Shown one piece after another: positions 7,141-38,564 of a stretch of 64,000 nt of DNA (positions within the stretch are counted from its first letter, which is position 1; each line of letters opens with the position of its first letter). The notes beneath the pieces were generated by a model, which was not told the origin of the DNA, searched no databases, and saw only the letters and a program-made list of their open reading frames with translations. This DNA comes from Camelus dromedarius. Lineage: Eukaryota. Location of the stretch: assembly GCF_036321535.1 (NCBI RefSeq), contig NC_087459.1:26970001-27034000 (forward strand), in the 5' to 3' direction. The translations under genes were made by a program, and so were the position numbers.

Positions 7141-8473
7141 TCAGCATATCAGGAGCTTGACACCTCCCTGGTGGGAGGACGGGAGACCCTCACCAACAAA
7201 CAGGGAGTCCACTGGCCTGTTCCTAACAAGCTGGAAGGGGTGGTCGGCCCCCAGTCTGACCCCTCCCTAGCACAAATCACCAGAGCCCTTCCGAGGTAGC
7301 AACAATCCCTCTCCCGGCCCCACCGATTTTTCTGGAGTGTTGAAGTGAAAACCTCAAGACGACTGGTTTTTCTGCTTGCCAGCCAGCCAGGCCCTAACCA
7401 ACCACGTGACATGGCTGGGGCCTAGGACACAGGAATGTCTCCAGGTTGCTTCTGCTCCTAGACCCAGAGCTCTGGCTGGGGGGCAGATGATCAAGAGTTG
7501 TGGGCAGGCTCAGGTTACCCAGTTAGATGGTAGGCTGGGGTGGGGGTAGGGGCCCATTTGAAACCATCCTTGAAATGCTACTCTTCTGAATCACCAACAT
7601 GACGTCAGCCCCTTTCCCCTTCATCCACCAATTCTAGAAAAACATCCTGCAGGATTTTCTCCAAGAACCCCTCTCCGGCCTTGGACCAGCCCCCATCCAG
7701 GGCTCAGATGCTCTCATCACTCCTATAATGACTATGCTGGCAACAAATGATCACACCACCTGGTGTGTTTAGAGTCCCCAGTGACCTCAAAGCCCTCCTC
7801 AGGTTAGAACAAAATACCCACTCATTATACTAGGCTGGCTCAAGATGGGGGTTATTTCATCAAGCAAGGCATTTGTTAGGCCATGGAGTTAGGATGCATT
7901 CTACTCTACTGACTCCATCAGGCCTGTCCTAAGGAGGTGGGGGAGAACCAGTGTAACCCTGGCTAGCCCAGGTGTCACCTCCTGGAGGGGACACTGACCC
8001 AGCCACCAACTGAACCTACACCCAGTGCCTGAATCTCTCCATGAGTAATTCAGTAAAATTACTGTTATACTTTGCACTAGACGAACAAAACATGACCTCG
8101 GGAGGCCCCCCAGGAACCCCCAGCCTATGGTGGACACATAGAAGGCCAATTCCGTAATACTTGTACAGTAGAGTCTGACAAATGCTTTGAGAACACCGGT
8201 GGAAGAGATTAGTTTCAACTGGGGAAATCTGGGAAGGCTTGAGGAAGAGGTAGTAGTTATCCTGGACCTTAAAAGATGTGAAGGACTGGGCAACTGGCTG
8301 CCCAAGATGTCAAGATGTGGTGGTCACAGCATCCCAGCAGGAAGTGATGGGGGTAAAGACCTAAAGGGAGGTGTGCAGTGTAGGCCTCAGGGTGCCTGGT
8401 AGTGAGAGAATGAGAAGCATGTGTGGAAAGGCCTGCTCCTCTGAGGGATCAGACTGGGAGAAGCTTGCGATGC

Positions 8474-9044
8474 TGTTGTGGACTCAGAATGCCACCTGCC
8501 ATACCAGTAAACAAAGGCTGTTTCCCCCATTAGCTGTTGCAGCCACCCTGAGGAAACTCAGGATGGGAAGCACAGGTTACTGGCTCTAGACGGCTAAGAT
8601 GCGTATCAAAGGAACGATTTCAATAAGGCCAGACTTTTGCATCTTTCCATACATAGAAAAGCACTAAATTCCTTAACTTGAGATACCTGCTTTTCTATAA
8701 TTAAAAAAATTTTTTTTTGTTTTGGGAAGAGGTAATTAGGTATTTATTTATTTTGATGGAGGTACTGTGGACTGAACCCAGGACCTTGTGCATGCTAGGC
8801 ACATGCTTTATCACTTGGCTATACCCTCCCCCCTGATTTTCTTTAATTAACAGTAATCTTTTGATGTTCTGACTACCTGGTCTTTGTTGCAAAAACTTCT
8901 ATATATCCCAGCTCCTCCCCTACCTCTTCAGAGCAGTCGCTATTGCCATCTGAGAGGCTGTCTCCCAGGCTTGAAGTCCTTGGAAAGTCTGCTGGGTAAA
9001 ACATAACTCCCAACTTTTAGGTTGTGCATTTTTTCCAGTGAACG
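8474..9044 (+). mobile_element. ERV1 solo LTR, MER41-like, interrupted by a SINE
   Basis: Starts TGTTGTGGACTCAGAATGCCACCTGCC; internal 'catacatagaaaagcactaaattccttaacttgagata' and 'ttaacagtaatcttttgatgttctgactacctggtctttgttgcaaaaac'; TATATA at 8900-8905; ends 'ttttaggttgtgcattttttccagtgaacg'; imperfect 4-bp TSD atgc/ctgc. Family assigned from memory of MER41-like consensus. Confidence 0.7.
8704..8831 (-). mobile_element. Vic-1-type SINE nested in the LTR
   Basis: Reverse-complement SINE body 'gaacccaggaccttgtgcatgctaggcac...ttggctataccctcccc'; 18-bp TSD cctg(c/a)ttttct(a/t)taatta at 8686-8703 and 8832-8849. Confidence 0.85.
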
Positions 9045-10620: not shown

Positions 10621-12399
10621 GGCCAGGGCGGGGCCAGCTTCTCTGTCCTCTGGGAGCGGCAGGTCTCGCTGAGCAGAAATTAAAGAAGAGGTTGACCTTC
10701 TGAGGATGCAGGCCACAGGGCAGACCCGGGCCCTAGATTGACCCCATTCATTCCCTCGTGCTTTCACCATTCCAGCCCTTCATTCGTGTTACAGATCTTT
10801 GTCTGCCTGCTCCATCCTGAGCTAGGCTTTGCTGTCCAATGCCTAAGTGTCAACACCCTCCACTCTAAGGGAGCCACACCCTGCTTGTTCACCAGGGGTG
10901 ATGGAAGCTTACCACCTCTTACAGCAGCCCATCCTTCTATGCTCCAGCTGTTGGAAGTTCTTGGCATCTACCTTCTCTCTGGTTGCCATCCAGCTAGGCC
11001 AGACCTTCAGAGATGTGGTCACACTCCTTGGGCCTTCTGGCAGAATTGGCTCCAGGTTCTTCATAGGGGCCTCCGAGGTCTGAGAACTAGGCCCTCTCAC
11101 CACCTGGGCCCTTTTTCCCCTTTTGGATCTCCCCACAGGCTTTCCACCTCCCTCAGCCTGCAGGTCTGCTAGACTTTTGGCTATGCCCAGAATGTGAATG
11201 CCAGCACTGATCCCCTCTCACCCACTCCCCAGGTGCTGATAGTGGATGCTCGGAACCATGGTGACAGCCCCCACAGCCCAGACATGAGCTACGAGGCCAT
11301 GAGCCAGGATATGCAGGACCTCCTGCCCCAGCTCGGCCTAGGGCCCTGTGTCCTCGTTGGCCATAGCATGGGAGGCAGGACAGCCATGCTGCTGGCACTA
11401 CAGAGGGTGAGCCATCCCTATCCAGGGCTTCCTCCCATCCCTTGTAGACCCTGAGTGCCCAGTAGGCAACCTGGGACTCCCAACGAGCCTTGGATGGCCA
11501 AGTTCAGGGTCCTATGCCCAAGACCCACTGTGCCTATCCTAAGGTCCCCAGTCTGATTCTCTCCCACAGCCGGAGTTGGTGGATCGCCTGATTGTTGTAG
11601 ACATCAGCCCATTGGAGAGCACATCTAGCTCGAACTTTCCAAACTACATAGCAGCCTTGAGAGCCATGGACATCCCAGATGAGGCATCCCTCTCCAGGGC
11701 CCGAAAACTGGCCAATGAGAAGCTCAGCTCTGTTATCCAGGTAACGCACCTAAGTGCAATCCCCTGTATGGTGTTATGGGCTGGGACCTGTCAAAGGAAG
11801 AGTGGCAGCCCAAGGCCTCACAGGGAACCCCCACCTGCTGGACCCCCACAGAGCGTAAGCATACGGCAGTTACTGCTCACTAACCTGGTGGAGGTGGACA
11901 GGCGCTTCGTGTGGAGGGTGAACCTGGATGCCTTGGCCCAGCACATAGACAAGATCATGGACTTCCCAGCACGACAAGAATCTTACTCGGGACCAGCCCT
12001 CTTCCTCCTTGGTGGAAACTCTAAATTCGTGCTGTAAGCCAGGTTGGGTGGTGGGAGGGGCATGCCTGACTTACCCAGCCCCCAGCCTGGGAAGTCTGCC
12101 TCAGGGAGGGCTTGGGTGTGGGCAGGGGGTGCCTGGGAACCCAGAAGCATCGCTGGGCATGTGGATTCACGTGGCTCTCCATCTCTCCCTGCTCTGCCTC
12201 TATTTCTCTCCTCCTCTCCCCATCTTCCTACTTTCACCCCTTCTCTGGGGCCTCTTCGGTGGACAGTCCCAGCCACCACCCTGAGATTAGGCGGCTCTTC
12301 CCTCGGGCCCAGATGCAGACTGTGCCTAACGCCAGCCACTGGGTGCACAGTGACCGCCCACAGGACTTCGTCGCTGCAGTCCGAGGCTTCCTGGCCTAA
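10138..12399 (+). CDS. ABHD11: Alpha/beta hydrolase domain-containing protein 11 (mitochondrial), 303 aa
   Basis: Exons 10138-10253, 10420-10555, 11233-11406, 11570-11740, 11852-12033, 12267-12399; all GT-AG, 912 nt in frame. MLCWARAWRLL... presequence-like N-terminus, LHGLFGS, DARNHGDSPH, GHSMGG nucleophile elbow, HWVHSDRPQDF. Confidence 0.96.
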
Positions 12400-12529
12400 G
12401 GGTTGCTGACCAGAAGGGACACTAAACTCCAGGCTTCAAGGCCCTGTGGCGCACTCCTTGTTTCTGCACAGAAGGTCTGAAGCCAGCACTGAGAGAGCAC
12501 GAGGATGCAGAGGTGGTGAGACCTCAAGC

Positions 12530-12542
12530 TTTAATGAATAAA
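12530..12542. terminator. Back-to-back poly(A) signals: AATAAA (+, 12537-12542, ABHD11) and ATTAAA (-, 12535-12530, antisense locus)
   Basis: Sequence 'tttaatgaataaa' lies between the ABHD11 stop (12399) and the antisense stop (12575). Confidence 0.7.
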
Positions 12543-12574
12543 ACACTCCTTCCAAGGTCTTGAGTCAAGCTTTC

Positions 12575-13738
12575 TCACCGCCAACGTCCCCACCGACCCA
12601 GGGGGAATTGGACCCAGGGGGTCCTGGCAGTTCTGGGGTCCACAGGGGCTCCCAGAGCACCCCTGGACTCTCTCTGCAGCTGAATCTCAACTCGCTGCCT
12701 CACCAGCTGCTGCATGTCCTCCTGGGGGCAGGAGAGCAGGTTCAGGGGCCAGGCCTGTGCCCGTCTGCCCCTGCCCCCCTGGGCCCGGCTGGCATTCCCA
12801 CCCTACCTCCCAGGCCTCCACTTCCTGCCTCAGTCTCAGTTTCTCCTCCAGGACTTCCAGCAGCTGGGCCTCCACAGCTCGCAGCTTGGCTTTGCATGTA
12901 TCCAGCTCAGCCTCCACGGCCTGTTTCCTGAGGGGGCAGAGAGAGCAGCATGAGGCTCAGGCCCTGCAGATCGGTTCTGGGCGCTGGGGGTGGACAAGTA
13001 TGTCCACAGTCCCCGCCTTGTGACCCGGTGGGTGTTTTGTGGCTTTCCTTCCAGGAATGCCTGGTGTGCCCCCTTCCCCTCCTGGCAGGACAGAGCCTTG
13101 AGAGTGAGTCACCCACTGCCCTCCCAGCCCCCACAAGCAGCTGCCTCTCACTTGGCAATGGCTTCATCCCGCTCTCGGAGGGCTTGGTCCAGGGAGAGTT
13201 CTGTCTGGGTGTCCCCCAGTGCTCCAGCCACTTAGGATTCTGGGCTCTGTTGTAGTGAGACCAAGGAGGGAGTGGTGATTTGGGGTTTGCCTGGATGAAG
13301 TGCCCCGCTTGGCCCTTTTACCCTGGCTGATGTCAGGAGGAGAAGGTTCTGAGATGTTCTTACCTGCCTCCCCAGTGCCCCAGTCTCAGCCTCTTAAGGT
13401 AAAGCAGGGGAGAGTAGGTCTCTTCCCGCCTAGGGATAAGCAGAGGGGCAGGATGTTCGGACCCCAAGGAGGAAAGATGACTCGCCCAATCCCAAGGAAA
13501 GAGATGTGGTCGGTTCAGCAGGATACTTACCTCTCGAGGGCCCCAGACTGAGAGGGTGGCCTGCTGACGGACTCTTGTTAGTGGGTGGGGCAGTCAGAGG
13601 ACATGGCCCTTTGCCCTCCCTTACTGGCAAGTCACTCCCTGTTAGGCCCCACCCTGGGCAGCCTGACCCTGCCTCTGCCTCCCTCCTGCAACCTGGAACC
13701 CAGAGCTTCCTCAGCCCCGTCCTTGCCCAGTCATTCAT
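12575..13738 (-). pseudogene. BICDL3P: BICD-family-like cargo adaptor remnant (position of human ABHD11-AS1/BICDL3P, mouse Abhd11os); coding status unresolved
   Basis: Minus-strand exons 13246-13152, 12927-12807 and 12721-12575 (GT-AG) splice in frame to ...LDQALRERDEAIAK-KQAVEAELDTCKAKLRAVEAQLLEVLEEKLRLRQEVEAWE-EDMQQLVRQRVEIQLQRE...WR*. This matches the BICDL1 C-terminus as I recall it (LQKAIRDRDEAIAKKNAVELELAKC...LLDAIQQKLNLSQQLEAWQDDM). Further candidate exons 13392-13364 and ?-13531 have strong donors. In-frame TAA at 13234-13232. The 5' boundary (ATG 13738) is tentative. Confidence 0.8.
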
Positions 13739-14796
13739 GTCTCTCACCCCAAGGGGGCGCTCTACTCACATCAGGAGATGAGAAAGGAGTGACAGCCAGG
13801 AAGGCTTCAATGCTGACAGAAGTTCCCCATCCTTCATCCTGAAGAGTTGGCACCTTGGAAACTTTAATGTCATCATCCACCATAACTGTGACCTTAGCTC
13901 AGCAGAAATCGGAAGGAAAAAAGTTTAACTGTTCCTGGCAAATTCCTTGTAACCTCTTAAATGTCCATCCTCCCTAGCAGTGTCCTCCAATATTCCACAA
14001 CATTGCTCATTACTCCTCCAAAATTCCCAACATTCTGATCCTTGAGCATGGGTGGGTCAGCTGTGCTCCGAGGGGTTGGGGCAGGGGGGTGTGGTCTCGG
14101 AATCTCATCCCACACCTCCCTCAGTGTGATCAGCACACACCAGTGACGTCAGACGTGGAAAAAGGCCTCCCCGTTGAGGGGCCTTTTCAGCAAGGTTACA
14201 TATTGGGGATTAGGCCCTCAACCCCACTCTAAACAGTACATACTTCCTCCAAGACCCCCCAGGAAGCTCCCTGTAGACATGACTCCTGATTGTCCAAGTG
14301 TCCCACTCAGCCACATGCACCTCCAATAGCCAGATGACACAATTTCTTCAGCTGAACCCCAGGTGAAGAGGTGGGGTTGAGCCGTAACCCAAGTACCAAG
14401 TTGAAGAGATTCATTCAGAGTGTTTTGGGAAGCTGCTCTGTGCAGTGATCCAGACAGGACCCCTGCCCTCAGGGCTCCCGCGGCTAGCATGAAGCAGAGA
14501 GAGAATCAGAAAAGGGTGCCAGGGAGTCCAGGGCAGTGGGAGCGCAAAGGAGGCCCATCACACCTGGTCACGGCGACCCACAGGAGCTTGTCCCGTGGGC
14601 CAGCAGGAGTCAGCCAGAAGGGCTAACACTCCTGCTGGGCATTTCTTTTAACTTTTTACTTTGAAACAATTTCAAACTGCTCTTCAATGTCCAGAAAAAA
14701 TATGCTTTTAGGGTAAAAAAAAAAAAATTTAGTATGGTATCAAACATTGTACCCGGTTGTCACATCTCTCTGGTCTCCCTCAATCTAGAACAATTT

Positions 14797-14933
14797 GGGA
14801 GAGAGTATAGGTCAGTGGTAGAGCCCCTGCTTAGCATGCAAAAAGGTCGTGGGTTCAATCCCCAGTACTGCCATTGAAATAAATAAGTAAACTTAATTAC
14901 CTCCCTCCCAAAATTTTTTTAAAAATTAAAAAA
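14797..14933 (+). mobile_element. Vic-1-type SINE with TSD
   Basis: A/B boxes, tail 'aaataaataagtaaacttaattacctccc'; TSD tagaacaatttg at 14786-14797 and 14934-14945. Confidence 0.88.
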
Positions 14934-15103
14934 TAGAACAATTTGCAGCCTTTCTTTGAATGTTGACCTCGACATTTTTGAAGGTTGTAGGGAAGTTATT
15001 TTGTAGACCATCCTTCAATTTGGCTTTGTCTCTTCCTTCCTCACGATTAGACCCCTGTTACACATTTTGGGCAGAAATATCACAAAAACGATGCTATGTT
15101 CTT

Positions 15104-15512
15104 TTTTCTTTTTTTCAACAAAAGGTCTCATGTATTTATTACTGAGCAAAAGCAACAGAGCACAGACACTGCCATGCAGATAAGCTCCATATTCCCAAAC
15201 GTGTCCAGCTGTTCAGGCAACAGCACTGTCTTCAGAGTAATCTGATAAGATGCAGATGACCTTGACTAAGCGTAAACATGTGCGCCACCTCATGTGNNNN
15301 NNNNNNNNNNNNNNNNNNNNNNNNNNNNNNNNNNNNNNNNNNNNNNNNNNNNNNNNNNNNNNNNNNNNNNNNNNNNNNNNNNNNNNNNNNNNNNNNNNNN
15401 NNNNNNNNNNNNNNNNNNNNNNNNNNNNNNNNNNNNNNNNNNNNNNNNNNNNNNNNNNNNNNNNNNNNNNNNNNNNNNNGCACATAGGATGGCGGAGAAG
15501 AGAAGAGAGAGT
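15104..15512 (-). pseudogene. RPL39: Processed RPL39 retrocopy; CDS falls inside the N-gap
   Basis: Minus strand begins with the 5'TOP-like leader 'ctcttctcttctccgccatc'. After the gap comes a 3' UTR 'cacatgaggtggcgcacatgtttacgc...aaggtca...cagtaataaa', which matches RPL39 mRNA as I recall it. AATAAA at 15140-15135, A-tail (T-run 15102-15115), TSD gatgcta(t/c)gttctt at 15090-15103 and 15513-15526. Confidence 0.8.
15297..15479. other. N-gap (183 N)
   Basis: Run of N. Confidence 0.99.
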
Positions 15513-16215
15513 GATGCTACGTTCTTGTATCCAATATCGTTTGGAACCATGACTGGTGGTTTTAATGTTACCAGTTGATCGTGATTAATAAGTATTGGGG
15601 GAGGGAAGTACTGTAAGACTATGAAACATCTTCATCCCACTCTCACCCATAGTCAGCATCCATTGATGTTTCTTGCCTGAATTAATTATTAATACAATGG
15701 CTTGCAAATGTTGATTTTCTAATTTCATTGTTTCTTCTACACTTATTAACTGGCCTACTGTAAGGAAGAGGTTTTTTTTTCATCCCATTTATTTATTGAT
15801 TTACTTATTTACATCCAGTGGACTTGTGATTTCCTGTTTTGTTTAATAGATTGTAACTCATTCCTGTCATTTATTTTGATGCTCACATTGTCCCAGATTT
15901 GGTCAGTGCATGCCCCTTGCTGATCTCTTGTCATTTTGATGTGTTCTATCATTCTTTGGACACCTCCGTTCTCTCTAGTTCAACCAGATAGTCCAAGTTC
16001 GTCTTGTTATTCCCTGCCCCAGTCCTGGAAGTAGCCATTTCAGCAACAATGCCTGTTTCTTTCTGGTGGAGAGTAGTATTTGGGAACCACGATCTGGGTG
16101 TTAGCTGTGCTCAATGCATTTAGGGTAGCCTCTATGCCCAGGCCCACTCAGTGGACACACATTTATATACACACATAAACTTACACATCTATACCTATGT
16201 TTATTCCTTTATCTG

Positions 16216-16693
16216 TGTGCTGGTTAATTTTATATGTCAACTTGGCTGGGCCAGGGAATGCCCAGATACCTGGTTAAACATGACTTCTGGGTATGTCTGG
16301 GAGGGTGTTTCCAGAAGAGATTAGCACCGGACTCTGTGTACTGAATAAATGGTGGCCCTCCCCGATACGAGTGGAGGCATCAACCAATCCACTGAGGGCC
16401 CGAATTGAACAAAAAGGCAGAGGAAAAATTGAATTTTCTCCTCCTGACTGCTGAGCTGGGATCTTGGTCTTCTTTTGCCCTTGAACTGGTGCCTGCACCA
16501 TCAGCGCTCCCTGGCTCTCAGGCCTTCTGTCTCAGTCTGGGACTCTACCACCCTGCTTTCCAAGCCTCCAGCTTGCAGACAGCAGATTGTGAGACTTCTC
16601 AGCCTCCATAATTACATGAGTCAATTCCTCATAATACGTCTCTTTCTCTATATTTATCCTATTGGTTCTGGTTCTCTGGAAAACCCTAATACA
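16216..16693 (+). mobile_element. MLT2 (ERVL) solo LTR, near full length
   Basis: Starts TGTGCTGGTTAATTTTATATGTCAACTTGGCTGGGCCA; 'gtttccagaagagattagc'; ends 'cctattggttctggttctctggaaaaccctaataca'. Confidence 0.85.
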
Positions 16694-16999
16694 ATTTCCA
16701 TATATTGAACAATAGTTTCCATTCAGACCTTAAGTTCAAGTCCAGTGGCACAGAGTTCATCCTAGTTTCCCCGTTTCCAGATTTTTTACCTTCTTGTCCC
16801 CAATTGTCTTCAATATATTTCATAATTTGTTCAGTCTCCCTGTGTGTGGCCGATCCCCCAAAACAATGGGCTCCCCCTGACTTAGATACCCTCCTTACAT
16901 GGGCTCAGGTCCTGCAGGGCTGCCTTGCCACCTTGACTCCAATGCCATCTGTATGCATGGCCCTGGCTGCCACAGGGCTATCAAATATTTCTAACAGCT

Positions 17000-17260
17000 T
17001 TATATTCATTCATTCATTCACTCATTCATTCCACTGGTACTTACTGAGCACCTACTACGCTCTGGGCATGTTTCCAGGTGATGGACATAAACAGGAAAAC
17101 AGACAAAGTTCCCTGACCTCCGAAGATCACATTCTAGGGAAAGCAGATAGACAATAAACAAATGCGTATACCAGATGGTAGGAAGTGCTGCGGAGAAAAA
17201 GAAAGCAGGGGAAGAGAATAAGAAAAGACTAGGAAATTGCTATTTTATATGATTCTGTGC
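17000..17260 (-). mobile_element. LINE-2 3' end
   Basis: 'attcattcattcactcattcattcc...ttactgagcacctactacgctctggg' is the reverse complement of the L2 terminus. Confidence 0.7.
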
Positions 17261-17269
17261 TACCCTAGG

Positions 17270-17560
17270 GAGATCACAGACATTAATCTTGCATTCTCAT
17301 GACTTGGAATAATATTGCCAGCAACAGCATCATTCATGGATTCAAAAAGCTCTGTATTTCCAAGCACAGGTGAAAATGACATATTCAAGAAAACTGTATT
17401 AGGGAACTCAAAGGAGATGCTAGAGATGACACCTGACATATGACCATGAGAGGCAGAAATGCAAGTGAAGTGTTTGAATAAACCTTCACATACTATGAGA
17501 GTGGAAAAGAATTGTTTTGAAATAAAGTTACTCTTAAAAGTATGCGATTTAAATTTTAAA
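17270..17560 (+). mobile_element. pogo/Tigger (TcMar) DNA transposon remnant
   Basis: 17302-17364 translates to TWNNIASNSIIHGFKKLCISK, resembling the pogo-type transposase C-terminal motif (W..I...I..GFKKC.IS). Confidence 0.55.
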
Positions 17561-18171
17561 TGTTTTAACTAAATATAATAACTAGAGAGTCGCTTATTTC
17601 ATCTGCATCCCTAAGTGTTTGAATTAGAATATTGGGCCAGATTTCTTTTTTTAAATCCTCATTGGGAAAAGGAGGGCAATATATTCAGGCATATAGTCAA
17701 TTGCATCACAAAGTCCTACCTCAGATATCACACAGTGAGCAGTGAGGCTCTTTCCCCAGCTGCCTACTACCTGTATCTCCCTCCTCTCCTGCTGCCTCCA
17801 GGATGGCTGAGCCCATCCTGGAGGATTGAGCTGAAAGATGGTTACAGGTTGATGGTGGGCTGGGAAGGCTGCAAGGGGGAGGGAGAGCTGCTGGAAGGGC
17901 AGGGCTGGGCCCTGTGGTCAAAACAGCTTGGATTTGCAGGGCTGGGTGGCTCACAAATCATGTCAGCCAACCTCAATACCCTGTTTATGTTTCCCTCTCT
18001 GAGCCTCTTAGTCCTCATTTGTGAAATGGAACTACTGGAGAGCCTTCCTAACAGGGTCACGGCCTGTGCTTTATACAATAATGTGCCAGGGCCAGACTTC
18101 CCAGGAAAGGAGAAACCGGGAGTAAGCCTGCCAGAAAGCAGCAGAAAAAACAACAACGAGAGGACATCGAT

Positions 18172-18214
18172 AACACACACACACACAAACACACCCACAC
18201 ACCCACACACACAC
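18172..18214. repeat. Imperfect (CA)n microsatellite
   Basis: Interrupted AC run. Confidence 0.9.
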
Positions 18215-18639
18215 TCCCCAGCTGTGGAGCCTGGGTCAGGTGCCCCCTCCTGCTCTGCACCCCCCTCACCTCTGCCCGAGGGACAATTCTGTCCTTGAAT
18301 CCTACACCAGCTGCTTCCTCTTCCTCCTTCAGACCCCCACAGCCCCTGTACTTCCACATCACTGCCTTCACACTGTCAAGGTGTCTCTCCCACCAGCCCA
18401 AGAGCTTCTGGAGGACAAGTGGTGACTGCCACGGTCCCAACCTGGGCACACACGCGCTCAGCAGAATTGCATGGGTGCAGCAACACCGGCCTTGCCCAGT
18501 AGGTGGCAGCAGTTTCCAATATCAGGGCTCCAAGGGCCCCAGCTCACCCTCCCAGCCTGTGGGATGGAAACTCCAAACCCGGTCTAGGGAGCTCCCAGAC
18601 GTCCAGCCTGACCCTCGGTGCTCCTTTATAGGAACCCAG

Positions 18640-21200: not shown

Positions 21201-23063
21201 GACCCTTGATTGCCTCCCCCTTGTCTGCACAATAAAGTTTAACATTCAAGGCCTCCCTCACTGGCCTCATCTCTCACCCATGCTCACCCCCACACCTGAG
21301 CACCACAGCAGGCTCCTAAGGGTCTCCAGATGCTCCCCACCCCAACCCCAGTGGATGCCTCCCACATTAAAATCATATCTGCCTCTCCCACCACACCAGG
21401 AGCACTTTAAGTGCAGAACAGTGGCCCTAGAACATGCATTCCTAGGTAATGTTTGATGAATGAATGAATGATTGAATGAGAGTAAGACCTGAATCAGAAG
21501 GGCAGAGTTTAAGGTGAAGGACACACATTCATTCTTTATTCATTTTTCATGCTACCATTTAATATACATCTCAATAAGTGACGCTGAACATAACACGAGG
21601 ACTCTGTGAAGGCAGGAGCTGTGTCTCCCCTTCCTGCCCTCTCCTCACAGGGCCAGACACTGGGCTCTGGGGCTGCACCCATGACTCATCCCACTGAGTC
21701 ACCCTGCACATGTGAAAGTACTCTGGACTGGGAGTCAGACAGCACCTTCCCTGTCACCTGTTCCCTGTAACTCTGGGCAAGTCTCTAGCAGATGAGTCCT
21801 GGTTTCGCATCTGTCAAATGGGGCACCACCAACGCTTGCTGTCTGGGACACTCAGGGTTGAGGTCTGGACAAGTGGAAGGGATGTGGCTGTCTCTCATGC
21901 CAGGCTACATCCTAGCCAGTCTTGGGCCAGACTTTCCAGGGAAGGAGGTATGGCTGGAACAGCATCTCCAGCCTGTCTGCTAGCCAGCTAACCTATACCC
22001 ACAGTCTGGGAGCAGTGCCAGGCCCGGACACACTGGGCAGCAGGGAGCTGGCCCAGCTCCAGAGCAACACCTTGGCAGCCCTGGGAAAGGGAAGGGGGAG
22101 TGCTTGGCTGAGGTCAAGAGGGTCTGGATCAGGGCACAGAGGGGACAGCTGGGCGGTGTTTGTGGCTACTGCTCAACAAGATGCTGGCAGGAACCAGAAA
22201 AGGAGCATCTGCTACTGACTAGCCTCCACCCACCACTTCACTACAGAAGTGCGAAGGTCTTCCATTAGTGTTAGAGGAGCTGGGCCGGGCTTAGCTGCCC
22301 CCAGCTTCTAGATAGGAAATAGAATCTCAGGCCTGGGGCTGGGACACAGGGTTGGAAATGCAGGGAAAGGGGAAGGAGATGGGCTATAACTTAGATCTCC
22401 TTCTCCAAAGATAGAGGGGTTCCTGCATCCTGTTGAGAGTGGAAACTGAGAAAAAAAGGGGGGGGGCCACCCAGCATCAGACTGTGAACTGAGAAATCCT
22501 GGGCAAAGAGAGGGCCAGAGCCTAGGTCTGGATGAGATGTCGGGGGAAGGCACGAAGGGTAGAGGTTCAGAGGCTGAAACTCTGGAGTTTTATGGCTAGA
22601 GGCAGTTTTTTGGAGGGGGATGCTGGAGGTTCCAAGGCAATAAAATCAAGGACGGAGGGTCTAACCTCTAGCAAATCCCTGGGGGTGTGAGGGGCCCTGG
22701 GTGAAGATCCAGGGTCTGGAAGGAAGGATACTGAGAGCTAAGTCAAGGGAGAGTTGGAACAGGGAAGGGGCTCTGGGGCTCGACCCGAGGCAGGAATCAT
22801 GCGGCATCGAGAACAGAAGGGGACGAGGTTCCAGGGCTGAGACCCTTCCAGAGAACCTGACTGAGGTGGGAGCAGGGAGCGGGAGTCCCAGACTCAGGAC
22901 TCTAGGCCGGGACCTGCCGGGGCGGGGCGGGACCGGACTGGGGGCTGGGCCGGGGTCCCGGGGGCCGGGGCGGGGCCGAGCTGGCGCTGCGCAGCCGCGG
23001 GGCGGCCACCGCGCATGCGGGGCTCACAGGGCTGCAGCCGGCGCCGCTGCCACTCCCGGGAGC

Positions 23064-38564
<15,501 letters not shown>

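What the first reader, a model, noticed from the sequence alone, without database searches (positions are those of the whole stretch)
12575..13246. The antisense 'lncRNA' locus keeps a spliced reading frame for a BICD-like coiled-coil protein
Seen: three minus-strand exons with good acceptors and donors (13246-13152, 12927-12807, 12721-12575). Their phases (2/1, then 0/0) join without frameshift into 115 open codons from 13231 to the TGA at 12577-12575, followed by ATTAAA. None of this is visible as one ORF in the six-frame track. The peptide (LDQALRERDEAIAKKQAVEAELDTC...LLEVLEEKLRLRQEVEAWEEDMQQLV) matches the BICDL1/BICDL2 C-terminus as I recall it. The human locus at this position is catalogued as lncRNA ABHD11-AS1/BICDL3P. 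Inference: frame and splice-site preservation suggests a third BICDL paralogue that stayed coding until recently or is still coding in some mammals, so effects ascribed to the lncRNA could involve a microprotein.
Basis: partly seen in the sequence, partly recalled or inferred. Interest (0 to 1): 0.8.

Follow-up and report, generated by a model that had tools for sequence, protein, structure and literature searches.

The report
Conserved short BICD-like coding gene beside ABHD11
The locus known in human as the "non-coding" RNA ABHD11-AS1/BICDL3P carries here a three-exon reading frame for the cargo-binding tail of a BICD-like dynein adaptor, and this frame has been kept under protein-level selection from marsupials to placentals although it has no conserved AUG start.

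Summary
Only the exon-1 acceptor lacks support.

- **Homology:** exon 2 alone hits BICDL1 residues 484-523 (E 1e-4). A profile of 33 orthologues hits 463-548 (E 5e-20). This is the Rab-binding tail, and the lysine needed for Rab6 binding is invariant.
- **Position:** the locus lies tail to tail with ABHD11 and upstream of STX1A, as expected for ABHD11-AS1/BICDL3P.
- **Orthologues:** about 90 predicted proteins from roughly 50 placental and 7 marsupial species. RNA-seq contigs from 7 species are spliced exactly at the two predicted junctions.
- **Selection:** codon analysis of 12 species gives omega 0.26 (2ΔlnL 116 against omega = 1). The other two frames give about 0.95. The window's own lineage gives about 0.16. 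The exons have no indels.
- **Open problem:** no in-frame ATG precedes exon 3 in any of 12 species read contiguously upstream of exon 1. The window has a TAA directly before the frame. No N-terminal BICDL exons survive.

Best reading: a cargo-binding-domain-only BICDL paralogue, still coding, probably started at a non-AUG codon. Translation itself is untested.

The parts
13232..13530 (-). Upstream part of the first exon (5' leader); its 5' end is uncertain
   Evidence: cDNA contigs of other species align colinearly upstream of the coding core, reaching window 13359-13531 and in one case 13880. Identity to pangolin and goat is only 67-69% with many indels. The reading frames differ between species and there is no in-frame ATG.
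13247..13248 (-).
   Evidence: The AG is present in 7 of 10 placentals, but the transcripts read through it. Marsupial gene models use an acceptor about one codon away, joined to upstream exons that carry an ATG.
13232..13234 (-). In-frame TAA where most orthologues read CAA (Gln of SPESQ)
   Evidence: The same TAA is present in contig L002 of a distant species.
13152..13231 (-). Coding core of exon 1 (26 codons plus 2 bases). Includes GTG at 13231-13229 and the invariant CTG at 13219-13217.
   Evidence: Translation. Identity to goat and pangolin is 85-89% with no indels. dN/dS is 0.25-0.33 in this frame against 0.8-1.4 in the other two. It aligns to BICDL1 at about residues 463-483.
12928..13151 (-). 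Intron 1 (GT..AG)
   Evidence: It is removed in cDNA of 7 species. Identity is 79-83% with 2-5 indel events.
12807..12927 (-). Exon 2 (121 nt). Encodes the Rab-binding core; the critical Lys codon is at 12842-12840.
   Evidence: It matches BICDL1 484-523 over its full length without gaps. It is 121 nt in placentals and marsupials alike. dN/dS is 0.19-0.22. The Lys aligns to BICDR-1 K512, which is required for Rab6 binding (PMC2876961), and it is invariant in 33 sequences.
12722..12806 (-). Intron 2 (GT..AG), phase 0
12575..12721 (-). Exon 3 coding part. The first in-frame ATG is at 12715-12713 and the TGA at 12577-12575.
   Evidence: dN/dS is 0.41-0.48. The stop lies at the same position in marsupials. 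The AlphaFold model predicts that the helix ends near residue 91 and that the tail is disordered.
12530..12535 (-). ATTAAA polyadenylation signal, 40 nt after the stop
   Evidence: It is conserved in the cDNA contigs.

Best explanation
This is the orthologue of human ABHD11-AS1/BICDL3P and mouse Abhd11os. It is a small three-exon gene lying tail to tail with ABHD11. What remains of a BICD-like (BICDL/BICDR) dynein-adaptor gene is only its C-terminal cargo-binding coiled coil: about 90 helical residues followed by a short basic, Trp-rich tail. That remnant is not decaying. Its reading frame, intron positions and phases, stop codon and the Rab-binding lysine are kept across therian mammals, under frame-specific purifying selection that includes the lineage of this window. 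It is therefore most likely translated into a protein of about 110 aa.

Because no conserved AUG precedes the constrained region, initiation is inferred to be at a near-cognate codon at the start of the conserved block. Candidates are the GUG at 13231 or the invariant CUG at 13219, which sits in a G(-3)/G(+4) context.

Inferred function: the protein would be a motor-less Rab6/Rab13-binding coiled coil. It could compete with full-length BICD and BICDL adaptors for the Rab, or pair with them.

Shown here: anatomy, homology, synteny, splicing in other species, and selection. Inferred: translation, the start codon, and Rab binding or competition.
For: - **Homology to the BICDL1 C-terminus:**. Orthologues carry Pfam BICDL2_C.
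- **Synteny:** ABHD11 lies on the + strand ending at 12399, and STX1A starts near 23060. The same order is seen in pangolin, and the last ABHD11 exon is adjacent in Trichosurus.
- **Orthologues:** 86 were found by profile search, spanning placental orders and 7 marsupials. The window peptide aligns end to end and ungapped at 75-92% identity.
- **Splicing:** cDNA contigs from 7 species are spliced at window 13152|12927 and 12807|12721.
- **Pairwise selection:** dN/dS is 0.19-0.46. The correct frame gives 0.33 against 0.96 and 0.92 for the shifted frames. Codons 1-67, which lie before any ATG, give 0.23.
- **Codon model:** omega is 0.264; lnL is -2055.95 against -2113.74 with omega fixed at 1.
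- **This lineage and marsupials:** window against pangolin gives Nd 9, Sd 17, p = 1.7e-5. The marsupial pair gives omega 0.20, p = 1.5e-5. The three-taxon estimate for the window branch is about 0.16.
- **Indels:** none in the exons, against 2-5 events per intron or UTR segment.
[quoted passage not shown] The equivalent Lys is invariant here.
- **Structure:** the AlphaFold model is a single helix over residues 2-91 with pLDDT above 90 for residues 11-80.
Against: - None of the 12 species has an in-frame ATG between the upstream stop and the conserved block when exon 1 is read contiguously. The window and L002 have a TAA directly before it.
- The GTG is replaced by GCG or GCA in several lineages.
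- The invariance of the nucleotides around the CTG is not statistically unusual.
- No Ribo-seq or proteomic evidence was found in the searchable literature.
- No RNA data from the window's own species were available.
- The protein databases list only species in which an ORF was called, so lineages with a broken frame are invisible. Human may be one, given its pseudogene alias.
- The introns are also fairly well conserved (79-88%).
Confidence: 0.72

Rival explanations
1. The locus is a true non-coding RNA or unitary pseudogene (BICDL3P). The open frame would then be a slowly decaying relic, or would be held by RNA- or DNA-level constraints such as splicing signals or overlap with the ABHD11 3' end, and nothing would be translated.
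For: There is no AUG, and stops lie directly upstream. The N-terminal motor-binding part of the family is gone: no coiled-coil-like open segments and no conserved blocks lie upstream. The human locus carries a pseudogene alias and is treated as an lncRNA in the literature. The introns are also conserved.
Against: RNA-level constraint does not predict a frame-specific deficit of non-synonymous change, which is 0.33 here against about 0.95 in the other frames. It also does not predict omega 0.26 with 2ΔlnL 116, zero exon indels, a shared stop codon, or an invariant functional lysine over roughly 160 Myr.
Confidence: 0.13
2. The gene is coding in other mammals but was recently inactivated in this species by the CAA>TAA change at 13234. 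That change would cut the frame off from upstream start codons.
For: Most orthologues read Gln there. Several gene models in other species start at ATGs further upstream.
Against: Those upstream extensions are not conserved and lie in different frames. Other species have stops 0-9 codons upstream without relaxed selection, namely L001, L002, L004 and L009. The window lineage has the lowest dN/dS of all tips, about 0.16. The TAA is shared with a distant species, L002, and the window-L002 pair still gives omega 0.32 (p = 0.0014).
Confidence: 0.1
3. Only the 46-codon ORF that starts at the first AUG (12715, in exon 3) is translated. Exons 1-2 would then be leader sequence.
For: It is the only AUG-initiated in-frame ORF. 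The Met is nearly invariant.
Against: The strongest protein-level constraint lies upstream of that AUG, at omega 0.23 against 0.41-0.48 for exon 3. The homology to BICDL1 and the Rab-binding lysine are also in exons 1-2.
Confidence: 0.05

Closest known systems
BICDL1 (BICDR-1, CCDC64) and BICDL2 (BICDR-2, CCDC64B), dynein-activating cargo adaptors
   Same: The C-terminal cargo-binding coiled coil is shared. BICDL1 residues 463-548 align at E 4.8e-20. The RDEAIAKK and EAW..DM motifs are shared, and so is the lysine equivalent to K512 that Rab6 binding needs. Orthologues are assigned to Pfam BICDL2_C.
   Different: The protein is about 110 aa rather than 500-580. The whole N-terminal dynein/dynactin- and Kif1C-binding part is absent, and no remnant exons are detectable upstream. 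It has its own Trp/Arg-rich tail and no AUG. It cannot be an activating adaptor; at most it could bind cargo or act as a competitor.
Human ABHD11-AS1 (LINC00035, BICDL3P) and mouse Abhd11os, described as lncRNAs
   Same: The position is the same: convergent with ABHD11, on the STX1A side. The gene is small, has three exons and is polyadenylated. The alias BICDL3P already records the BICDL ancestry. A Mus musculus partial product with the same frame is in the databases.
   Different: The literature treats the locus as non-coding, as a miRNA sponge and similar. Here the frame is intact and under purifying selection. The human sequence was not examined.
Conserved non-AUG-initiated proteins and N-terminal extensions (for example EIF4G2, PTEN-L, MYC, FGF2; recalled from my own knowledge)
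   Same: A constrained coding region extends upstream of the first AUG with no conserved AUG available. Near-cognate codons in good context lie at the start of the conserved block.
   Different: Initiation here is only inferred, and no start-site mapping exists. The GUG is not universal, and the conservation of the CUG is not statistically exceptional.

Membership tests
BICDL/BICDR dynein adaptor family | C-terminal cargo (Rab)-binding coiled coil with the conserved lysine (BICDR-1 K512, BICD2 K785) | tested here: met
   Exon 2 aligns to BICDL1 484-523, and residue 29 (codon 12842-12840) falls on K512. That Lys is invariant in alignments of 18 and 33 sequences. The profile gives E 4.8e-20.
BICDL/BICDR dynein adaptor family | N-terminal coiled coil that binds and activates dynein-dynactin, in a protein of about 500-580 aa | tested here: not met
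   The ORF is 115 codons. No coiled-coil-like open segments lie between 13250 and 23000 on the minus strand. No conserved gap-free blocks lie upstream when compared with pangolin or goat. No orthologue model has a BICDL-like N-terminus. A direct tblastn with full-length BICDL1/2 could not be run.
BICDL/BICDR dynein adaptor family | Match to Pfam PF27654 (BICDL2_C) | tested here: inconclusive
   The match is precomputed for nearly all orthologues. The local Pfam copy returned nothing for the orthologues or for the window's exon pieces, so it apparently lacks this model. The window's spliced peptide has no single reference and could not be scanned whole.
Separate third paralogue (BICDL3), as opposed to a partial copy of BICDL1 or BICDL2 | Branches outside the BICDL1 and BICDL2 clades, with a full-length orthologue at the ABHD11-STX1A interval in non-mammals | not tested
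   Three protein searches returned only locus orthologues and no BICDL1/2 sequences. All hits are therian.
ABHD11-AS1 / Abhd11os locus | Convergent (tail to tail) with ABHD11, between ABHD11 and STX1A, producing a spliced three-exon transcript | tested here: met
   The ABHD11 stop is at 12399 (+) and this gene's stop at 12575 (-). STX1A exon 1 lies near 23060. The same order is seen in pangolin. The junctions are confirmed by cDNA of 7 other species. Expression in this species was not testable.
Unitary pseudogene | Disabling mutations within the homologous region and neutral evolution (omega near 1) | tested here: not met
   No stop or frameshift occurs within the 115 codons. Omega is 0.26 and significantly below 1. 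The frame-shift control gives about 0.95. Only the loss of the 5' part of the ancestral gene fits a pseudogene.
Translated microprotein / non-AUG-initiated protein | Direct evidence of translation and a mapped start site | not testable with these tools
   No Ribo-seq or proteomic report on this locus was found. No AUG was found in 12 species.

The most novel reading that the evidence does not exclude
Across therian mammals, the much-studied 'lncRNA' ABHD11-AS1/Abhd11os would really be an mRNA for a protein of about 110 aa that consists only of the cargo-binding domain of a BICD-like adaptor. Translation would start at a non-AUG codon. The protein would act as a motor-less Rab6/Rab13 binder that tunes or blocks dynein-adaptor recruitment. 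At least some phenotypes assigned to the RNA would then be protein-mediated.
Probability: 0.3. Interest if true: 0.85.

Novelty: new variant of a known kind. Interest (0 to 1): 0.62.

Why it matters
ABHD11-AS1 is widely described as an oncogenic lncRNA, and mouse Abhd11os as a neuroprotective one. The searchable papers that discuss them explain both through RNA mechanisms. If the conserved frame is translated, those experiments (overexpression, knock-down) also changed the level of a Rab-binding coiled-coil protein.

The locus would also be a clear case of a gene that lost its motor-binding half yet kept its cargo-binding half under selection for roughly 160 Myr. It would further be a candidate for conserved non-AUG initiation.

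For genome annotation, the locus should not be labelled a pseudogene or lncRNA by transfer from human.

Tried and rejected
- **Pfam scan.** Scanning the exon pieces and four orthologues found nothing relevant. The local copy seems to lack PF27654.
- **PDB searches with single exons.** Exon 1 or exon 3 alone gave no BICDL hit. Only exon 2 and longer orthologue or profile queries did.
- **Fetching full-length BICDL1/2.** Three protein-database searches returned locus orthologues only. No gene tree and no tblastn for N-terminal relics could therefore be made.
- **Bacterial promoter/terminator scan.** Irrelevant for this locus.
- **Foldseek.** The single-helix model gave no match against PDB.
- **Ancestral-state reconstruction.** Three-taxon distance estimates were used instead.
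- **Apparent upstream exon in contig L007 (window 17019-16878).** Rejected. There is no donor at the break. The 1-140/157 break in L007 lies next to roughly 3 kb of window sequence (about 13890-16870) that L007 lacks. This looks like an indel between genomes rather than an intron, but it was not established.
- **Special conservation of the CUG context.** The longest run of invariant codons does lie there, but a run of 4 is not unusual.
- **One look-up failed.** The Sus scrofa product is not on record.
- **Earlier scan notes.** Nothing on this locus.

Full report
**1. Observation**

- AG|13246-13152|GTGAGA
- CAG|12927-12807|GTAGGG
- CAG|12721 onwards, to the TGA at 12577-12575
- ATTAAA at 12535-12530

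The pieces translate cleanly. Joined, they give 115 open codons from 13231. No six-frame ORF shows this.

- The codon just before the frame is TAA (13234-13232), which lies inside the proposed exon 1.
- The first in-frame ATG is at 12715-12713, in exon 3.

**2. Surroundings**

ABHD11 lies on the + strand from about 10181 to its stop at 12399, so the two genes converge with 176 nt between their stops. STX1A exon 1, inside a CpG island, starts near 23060 on the + strand. This is the position expected for ABHD11-AS1. A 2025 paper gives BICDL3P as an alias of that gene (PMC11951875). The human sequence was not consulted.

**3. Homology**

- Exon 2 alone (40 aa) matches mouse BICDL1 in PDB 6f1u, residues 484-523, over its full length without gaps (E 1.1e-4).
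- A whale orthologue of the whole peptide matches residues 463-555 (E 6.6e-16).
- A 33-sequence profile matches residues 463-548 (E 4.8e-20).
- Database annotation assigns the orthologues to Pfam PF27654, BICDL2_C.

This stretch lies within BICDR-1 residues 382-577, the fragment that binds Rab6-GTP directly. The K512M change abolishes that binding, and BICDR-2 prefers Rab13 (Schlager et al. 2010, PMC2876961). K512 aligns with exon-2 residue 29 (codon 12842-12840), and this residue is invariant in every orthologue aligned.

AlphaFold2, run on the pangolin orthologue with that alignment, gives one long helix over residues 2-91 at high confidence and a disordered tail.

**4. Distribution**

A search of 1.8 billion representative proteins with exon 2 found 38 relatives, all short. 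A profile search found 86. They include NCBI gene models from:
- cetaceans, ruminants, pig, horse, rhinoceros, carnivores, pangolin and bat
- tree shrew, a New World monkey, many rodents and three xenarthrans
- seven marsupials

The names given are 'BICD family-like cargo adapter 1/2', 'bicaudal D-related protein homolog' or 'uncharacterized'.

The window peptide aligns end to end without gaps at 75-92% identity to about 45 placental sequences, and at about 50% to the marsupial ones. No non-mammalian relative and no full-length BICDL1/2 was retrieved.

**5. Transcripts**

Seven different species are represented by 1-2 kb contigs assembled from public sequencing runs (L001-L009). In these contigs the three exons are already joined. 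They align to the window with breaks exactly at 13151/12927 and 12806/12723.

Many of the contigs continue into spliced ABHD11 sequence on the other strand. They are therefore RNA-derived, and the two transcripts overlap or abut at their 3' ends.

In placentals, then, exon 1 is a first exon with a leader.

Marsupial gene models do use an acceptor about one codon away, joined to two upstream exons that carry an ATG.

**6. Selection**

I took coding sequences from the seven cDNAs, from the window, and from genomic loci of pangolin, goat, brushtail possum and wombat.

| Comparison | Result |
|---|---|
| Pairwise Nei-Gojobori dN/dS, 8 taxa | 0.19-0.46 |
| Median, correct frame / +1 frame / +2 frame | 0.33 / 0.96 / 0.92 |
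| Codons 1-67 (upstream of any ATG) | 0.23 |
| Exon 3 | 0.41 |
| IQ-TREE GY+F3X4, 12 taxa | omega 0.264; lnL -2055.95 vs -2113.74 at omega = 1 (2ΔlnL = 115.6, 1 df) |
| Window vs pangolin | 9 non-synonymous, 17 synonymous differences; p = 1.7e-5 |
| Marsupial pair | omega 0.20; p = 1.5e-5 |
| Window branch, three-taxon distance estimate | about 0.16, the lowest of all tips |

Compared with pangolin and goat, the exons have no indels, while each intron or UTR segment has 2-5 indel events. Exon 2 is 121 nt in all twelve species. The stop codon is at the same place in marsupials and placentals.

**7. The start-codon problem**

When the sequence is read upstream contiguously, none of the twelve species has an in-frame ATG between the nearest upstream stop and the conserved block. 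That stop lies 0 to about 50 codons away.

The window and contig L002, which comes from a distant species, share the TAA directly before the GTG. L001 has a 9-nt deletion at this spot (spanning the window's TAA codon) and stops just upstream. L004 has a TAG five codons upstream.

The N-terminal extensions in various gene models are not conserved and use different frames of homologous DNA. No conserved, gap-free block that could be an extra coding exon lies between this gene and STX1A. No coiled-coil-like open segment lies there either.

Since the part before the first AUG is the most constrained, the simplest reading is non-AUG initiation at the head of the conserved block. There are two candidates:
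- The GTG at 13231. It is present in marsupials, xenarthrans and many laurasiatherians, but is GCG or GCA in others.
- The CTG at 13219. It is invariant, with G at -3 and +4.

This is inference. The nucleotide invariance around the CTG is not statistically remarkable.

**8. What it is and how it probably works**

The locus is a truncated BICDL-family gene that keeps only the cargo-binding domain. It has been retained as a coding sequence in therians.

By analogy with BICDR-1 and BICD2, which compete for Rab6 through this domain, the product would bind a GTP-loaded Rab (Rab6, Rab13 or another) without recruiting dynein. It could act as a competitor of the full-length adaptors or as a partner for them. 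None of this was tested.

**9. Caveats**

- The databases contain only lineages in which an ORF was called. Broken copies are invisible, and human may be one.
- Expression and translation in this species are unknown.
- Whether this is an ancient third paralogue or a partial copy of BICDL1 or BICDL2 remains open.

**10. Novelty**

The BICDL ancestry of the locus is already recorded (alias BICDL3P, gene models, a Pfam family). The whole-word search for 'BICDL3' found no paper, and none of the searches found a report of translation or purifying selection at this locus. The main review consulted has no mention of coding potential or an open reading frame.

The following appear to be new:
- evidence for therian-wide purifying selection
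- conserved splicing
- a preserved functional lysine
- the missing AUG

Noticed in passing
window 12399-12575, and loci L001, L004-L009: The assembled RNA contigs join this gene's spliced transcript to spliced ABHD11 mRNA on the opposite strand. The two convergent transcripts therefore overlap or abut at their 3' ends, and only 176 nt separate the two stop codons here. This leaves room for sense-antisense interplay independent of any protein.
   Followed up: partly
L010 11771-15629 and L011 9546-13694 (marsupials): Marsupial gene models treat the GT that overlaps the conserved TGA stop (GG|TGAGAG) as a donor. They splice to an exon about 4 kb downstream, beyond the last ABHD11 exon, which adds about 27-55 residues. 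If unspliced, the frame ends at the same stop as in placentals.
   Followed up: partly
window 15930-18316: About 2.4 kb is present here and in goat but absent from the pangolin locus. This is consistent with the window coming from a cetartiodactyl. It contains the AT-rich stretch with the N run at 15297-15479, which was left untouched.
   Followed up: no
L013 8007-8153 versus 8299-8520 (Capra ibex): The goat gene model maps its residues 10-57 about 300 nt upstream of the exon-1 core, and a second, weaker match overlaps the core. This may be a local duplication or an odd annotation of the leader.
   Followed up: no
window 13167-12907 (minus strand): An ATG inside exon 1 but in another frame (the ATG within ...CGGGATGAAGCC...) opens an 86-codon unspliced ORF through intron 1. 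Several database 'proteins' (for example P0002, P0004, P0098) are such intron-retaining reads that happen to re-enter the exon-2 frame in other species. They are artefacts of ORF calling and are not conserved in frame.
   Followed up: partly
window 22500-24000: This is a strong CpG island (GC up to 0.75, CpG observed/expected up to 0.81) around STX1A exon 1. The short gene has no CpG island of its own: observed/expected is about 0.2 across 12500-14000.
   Followed up: no
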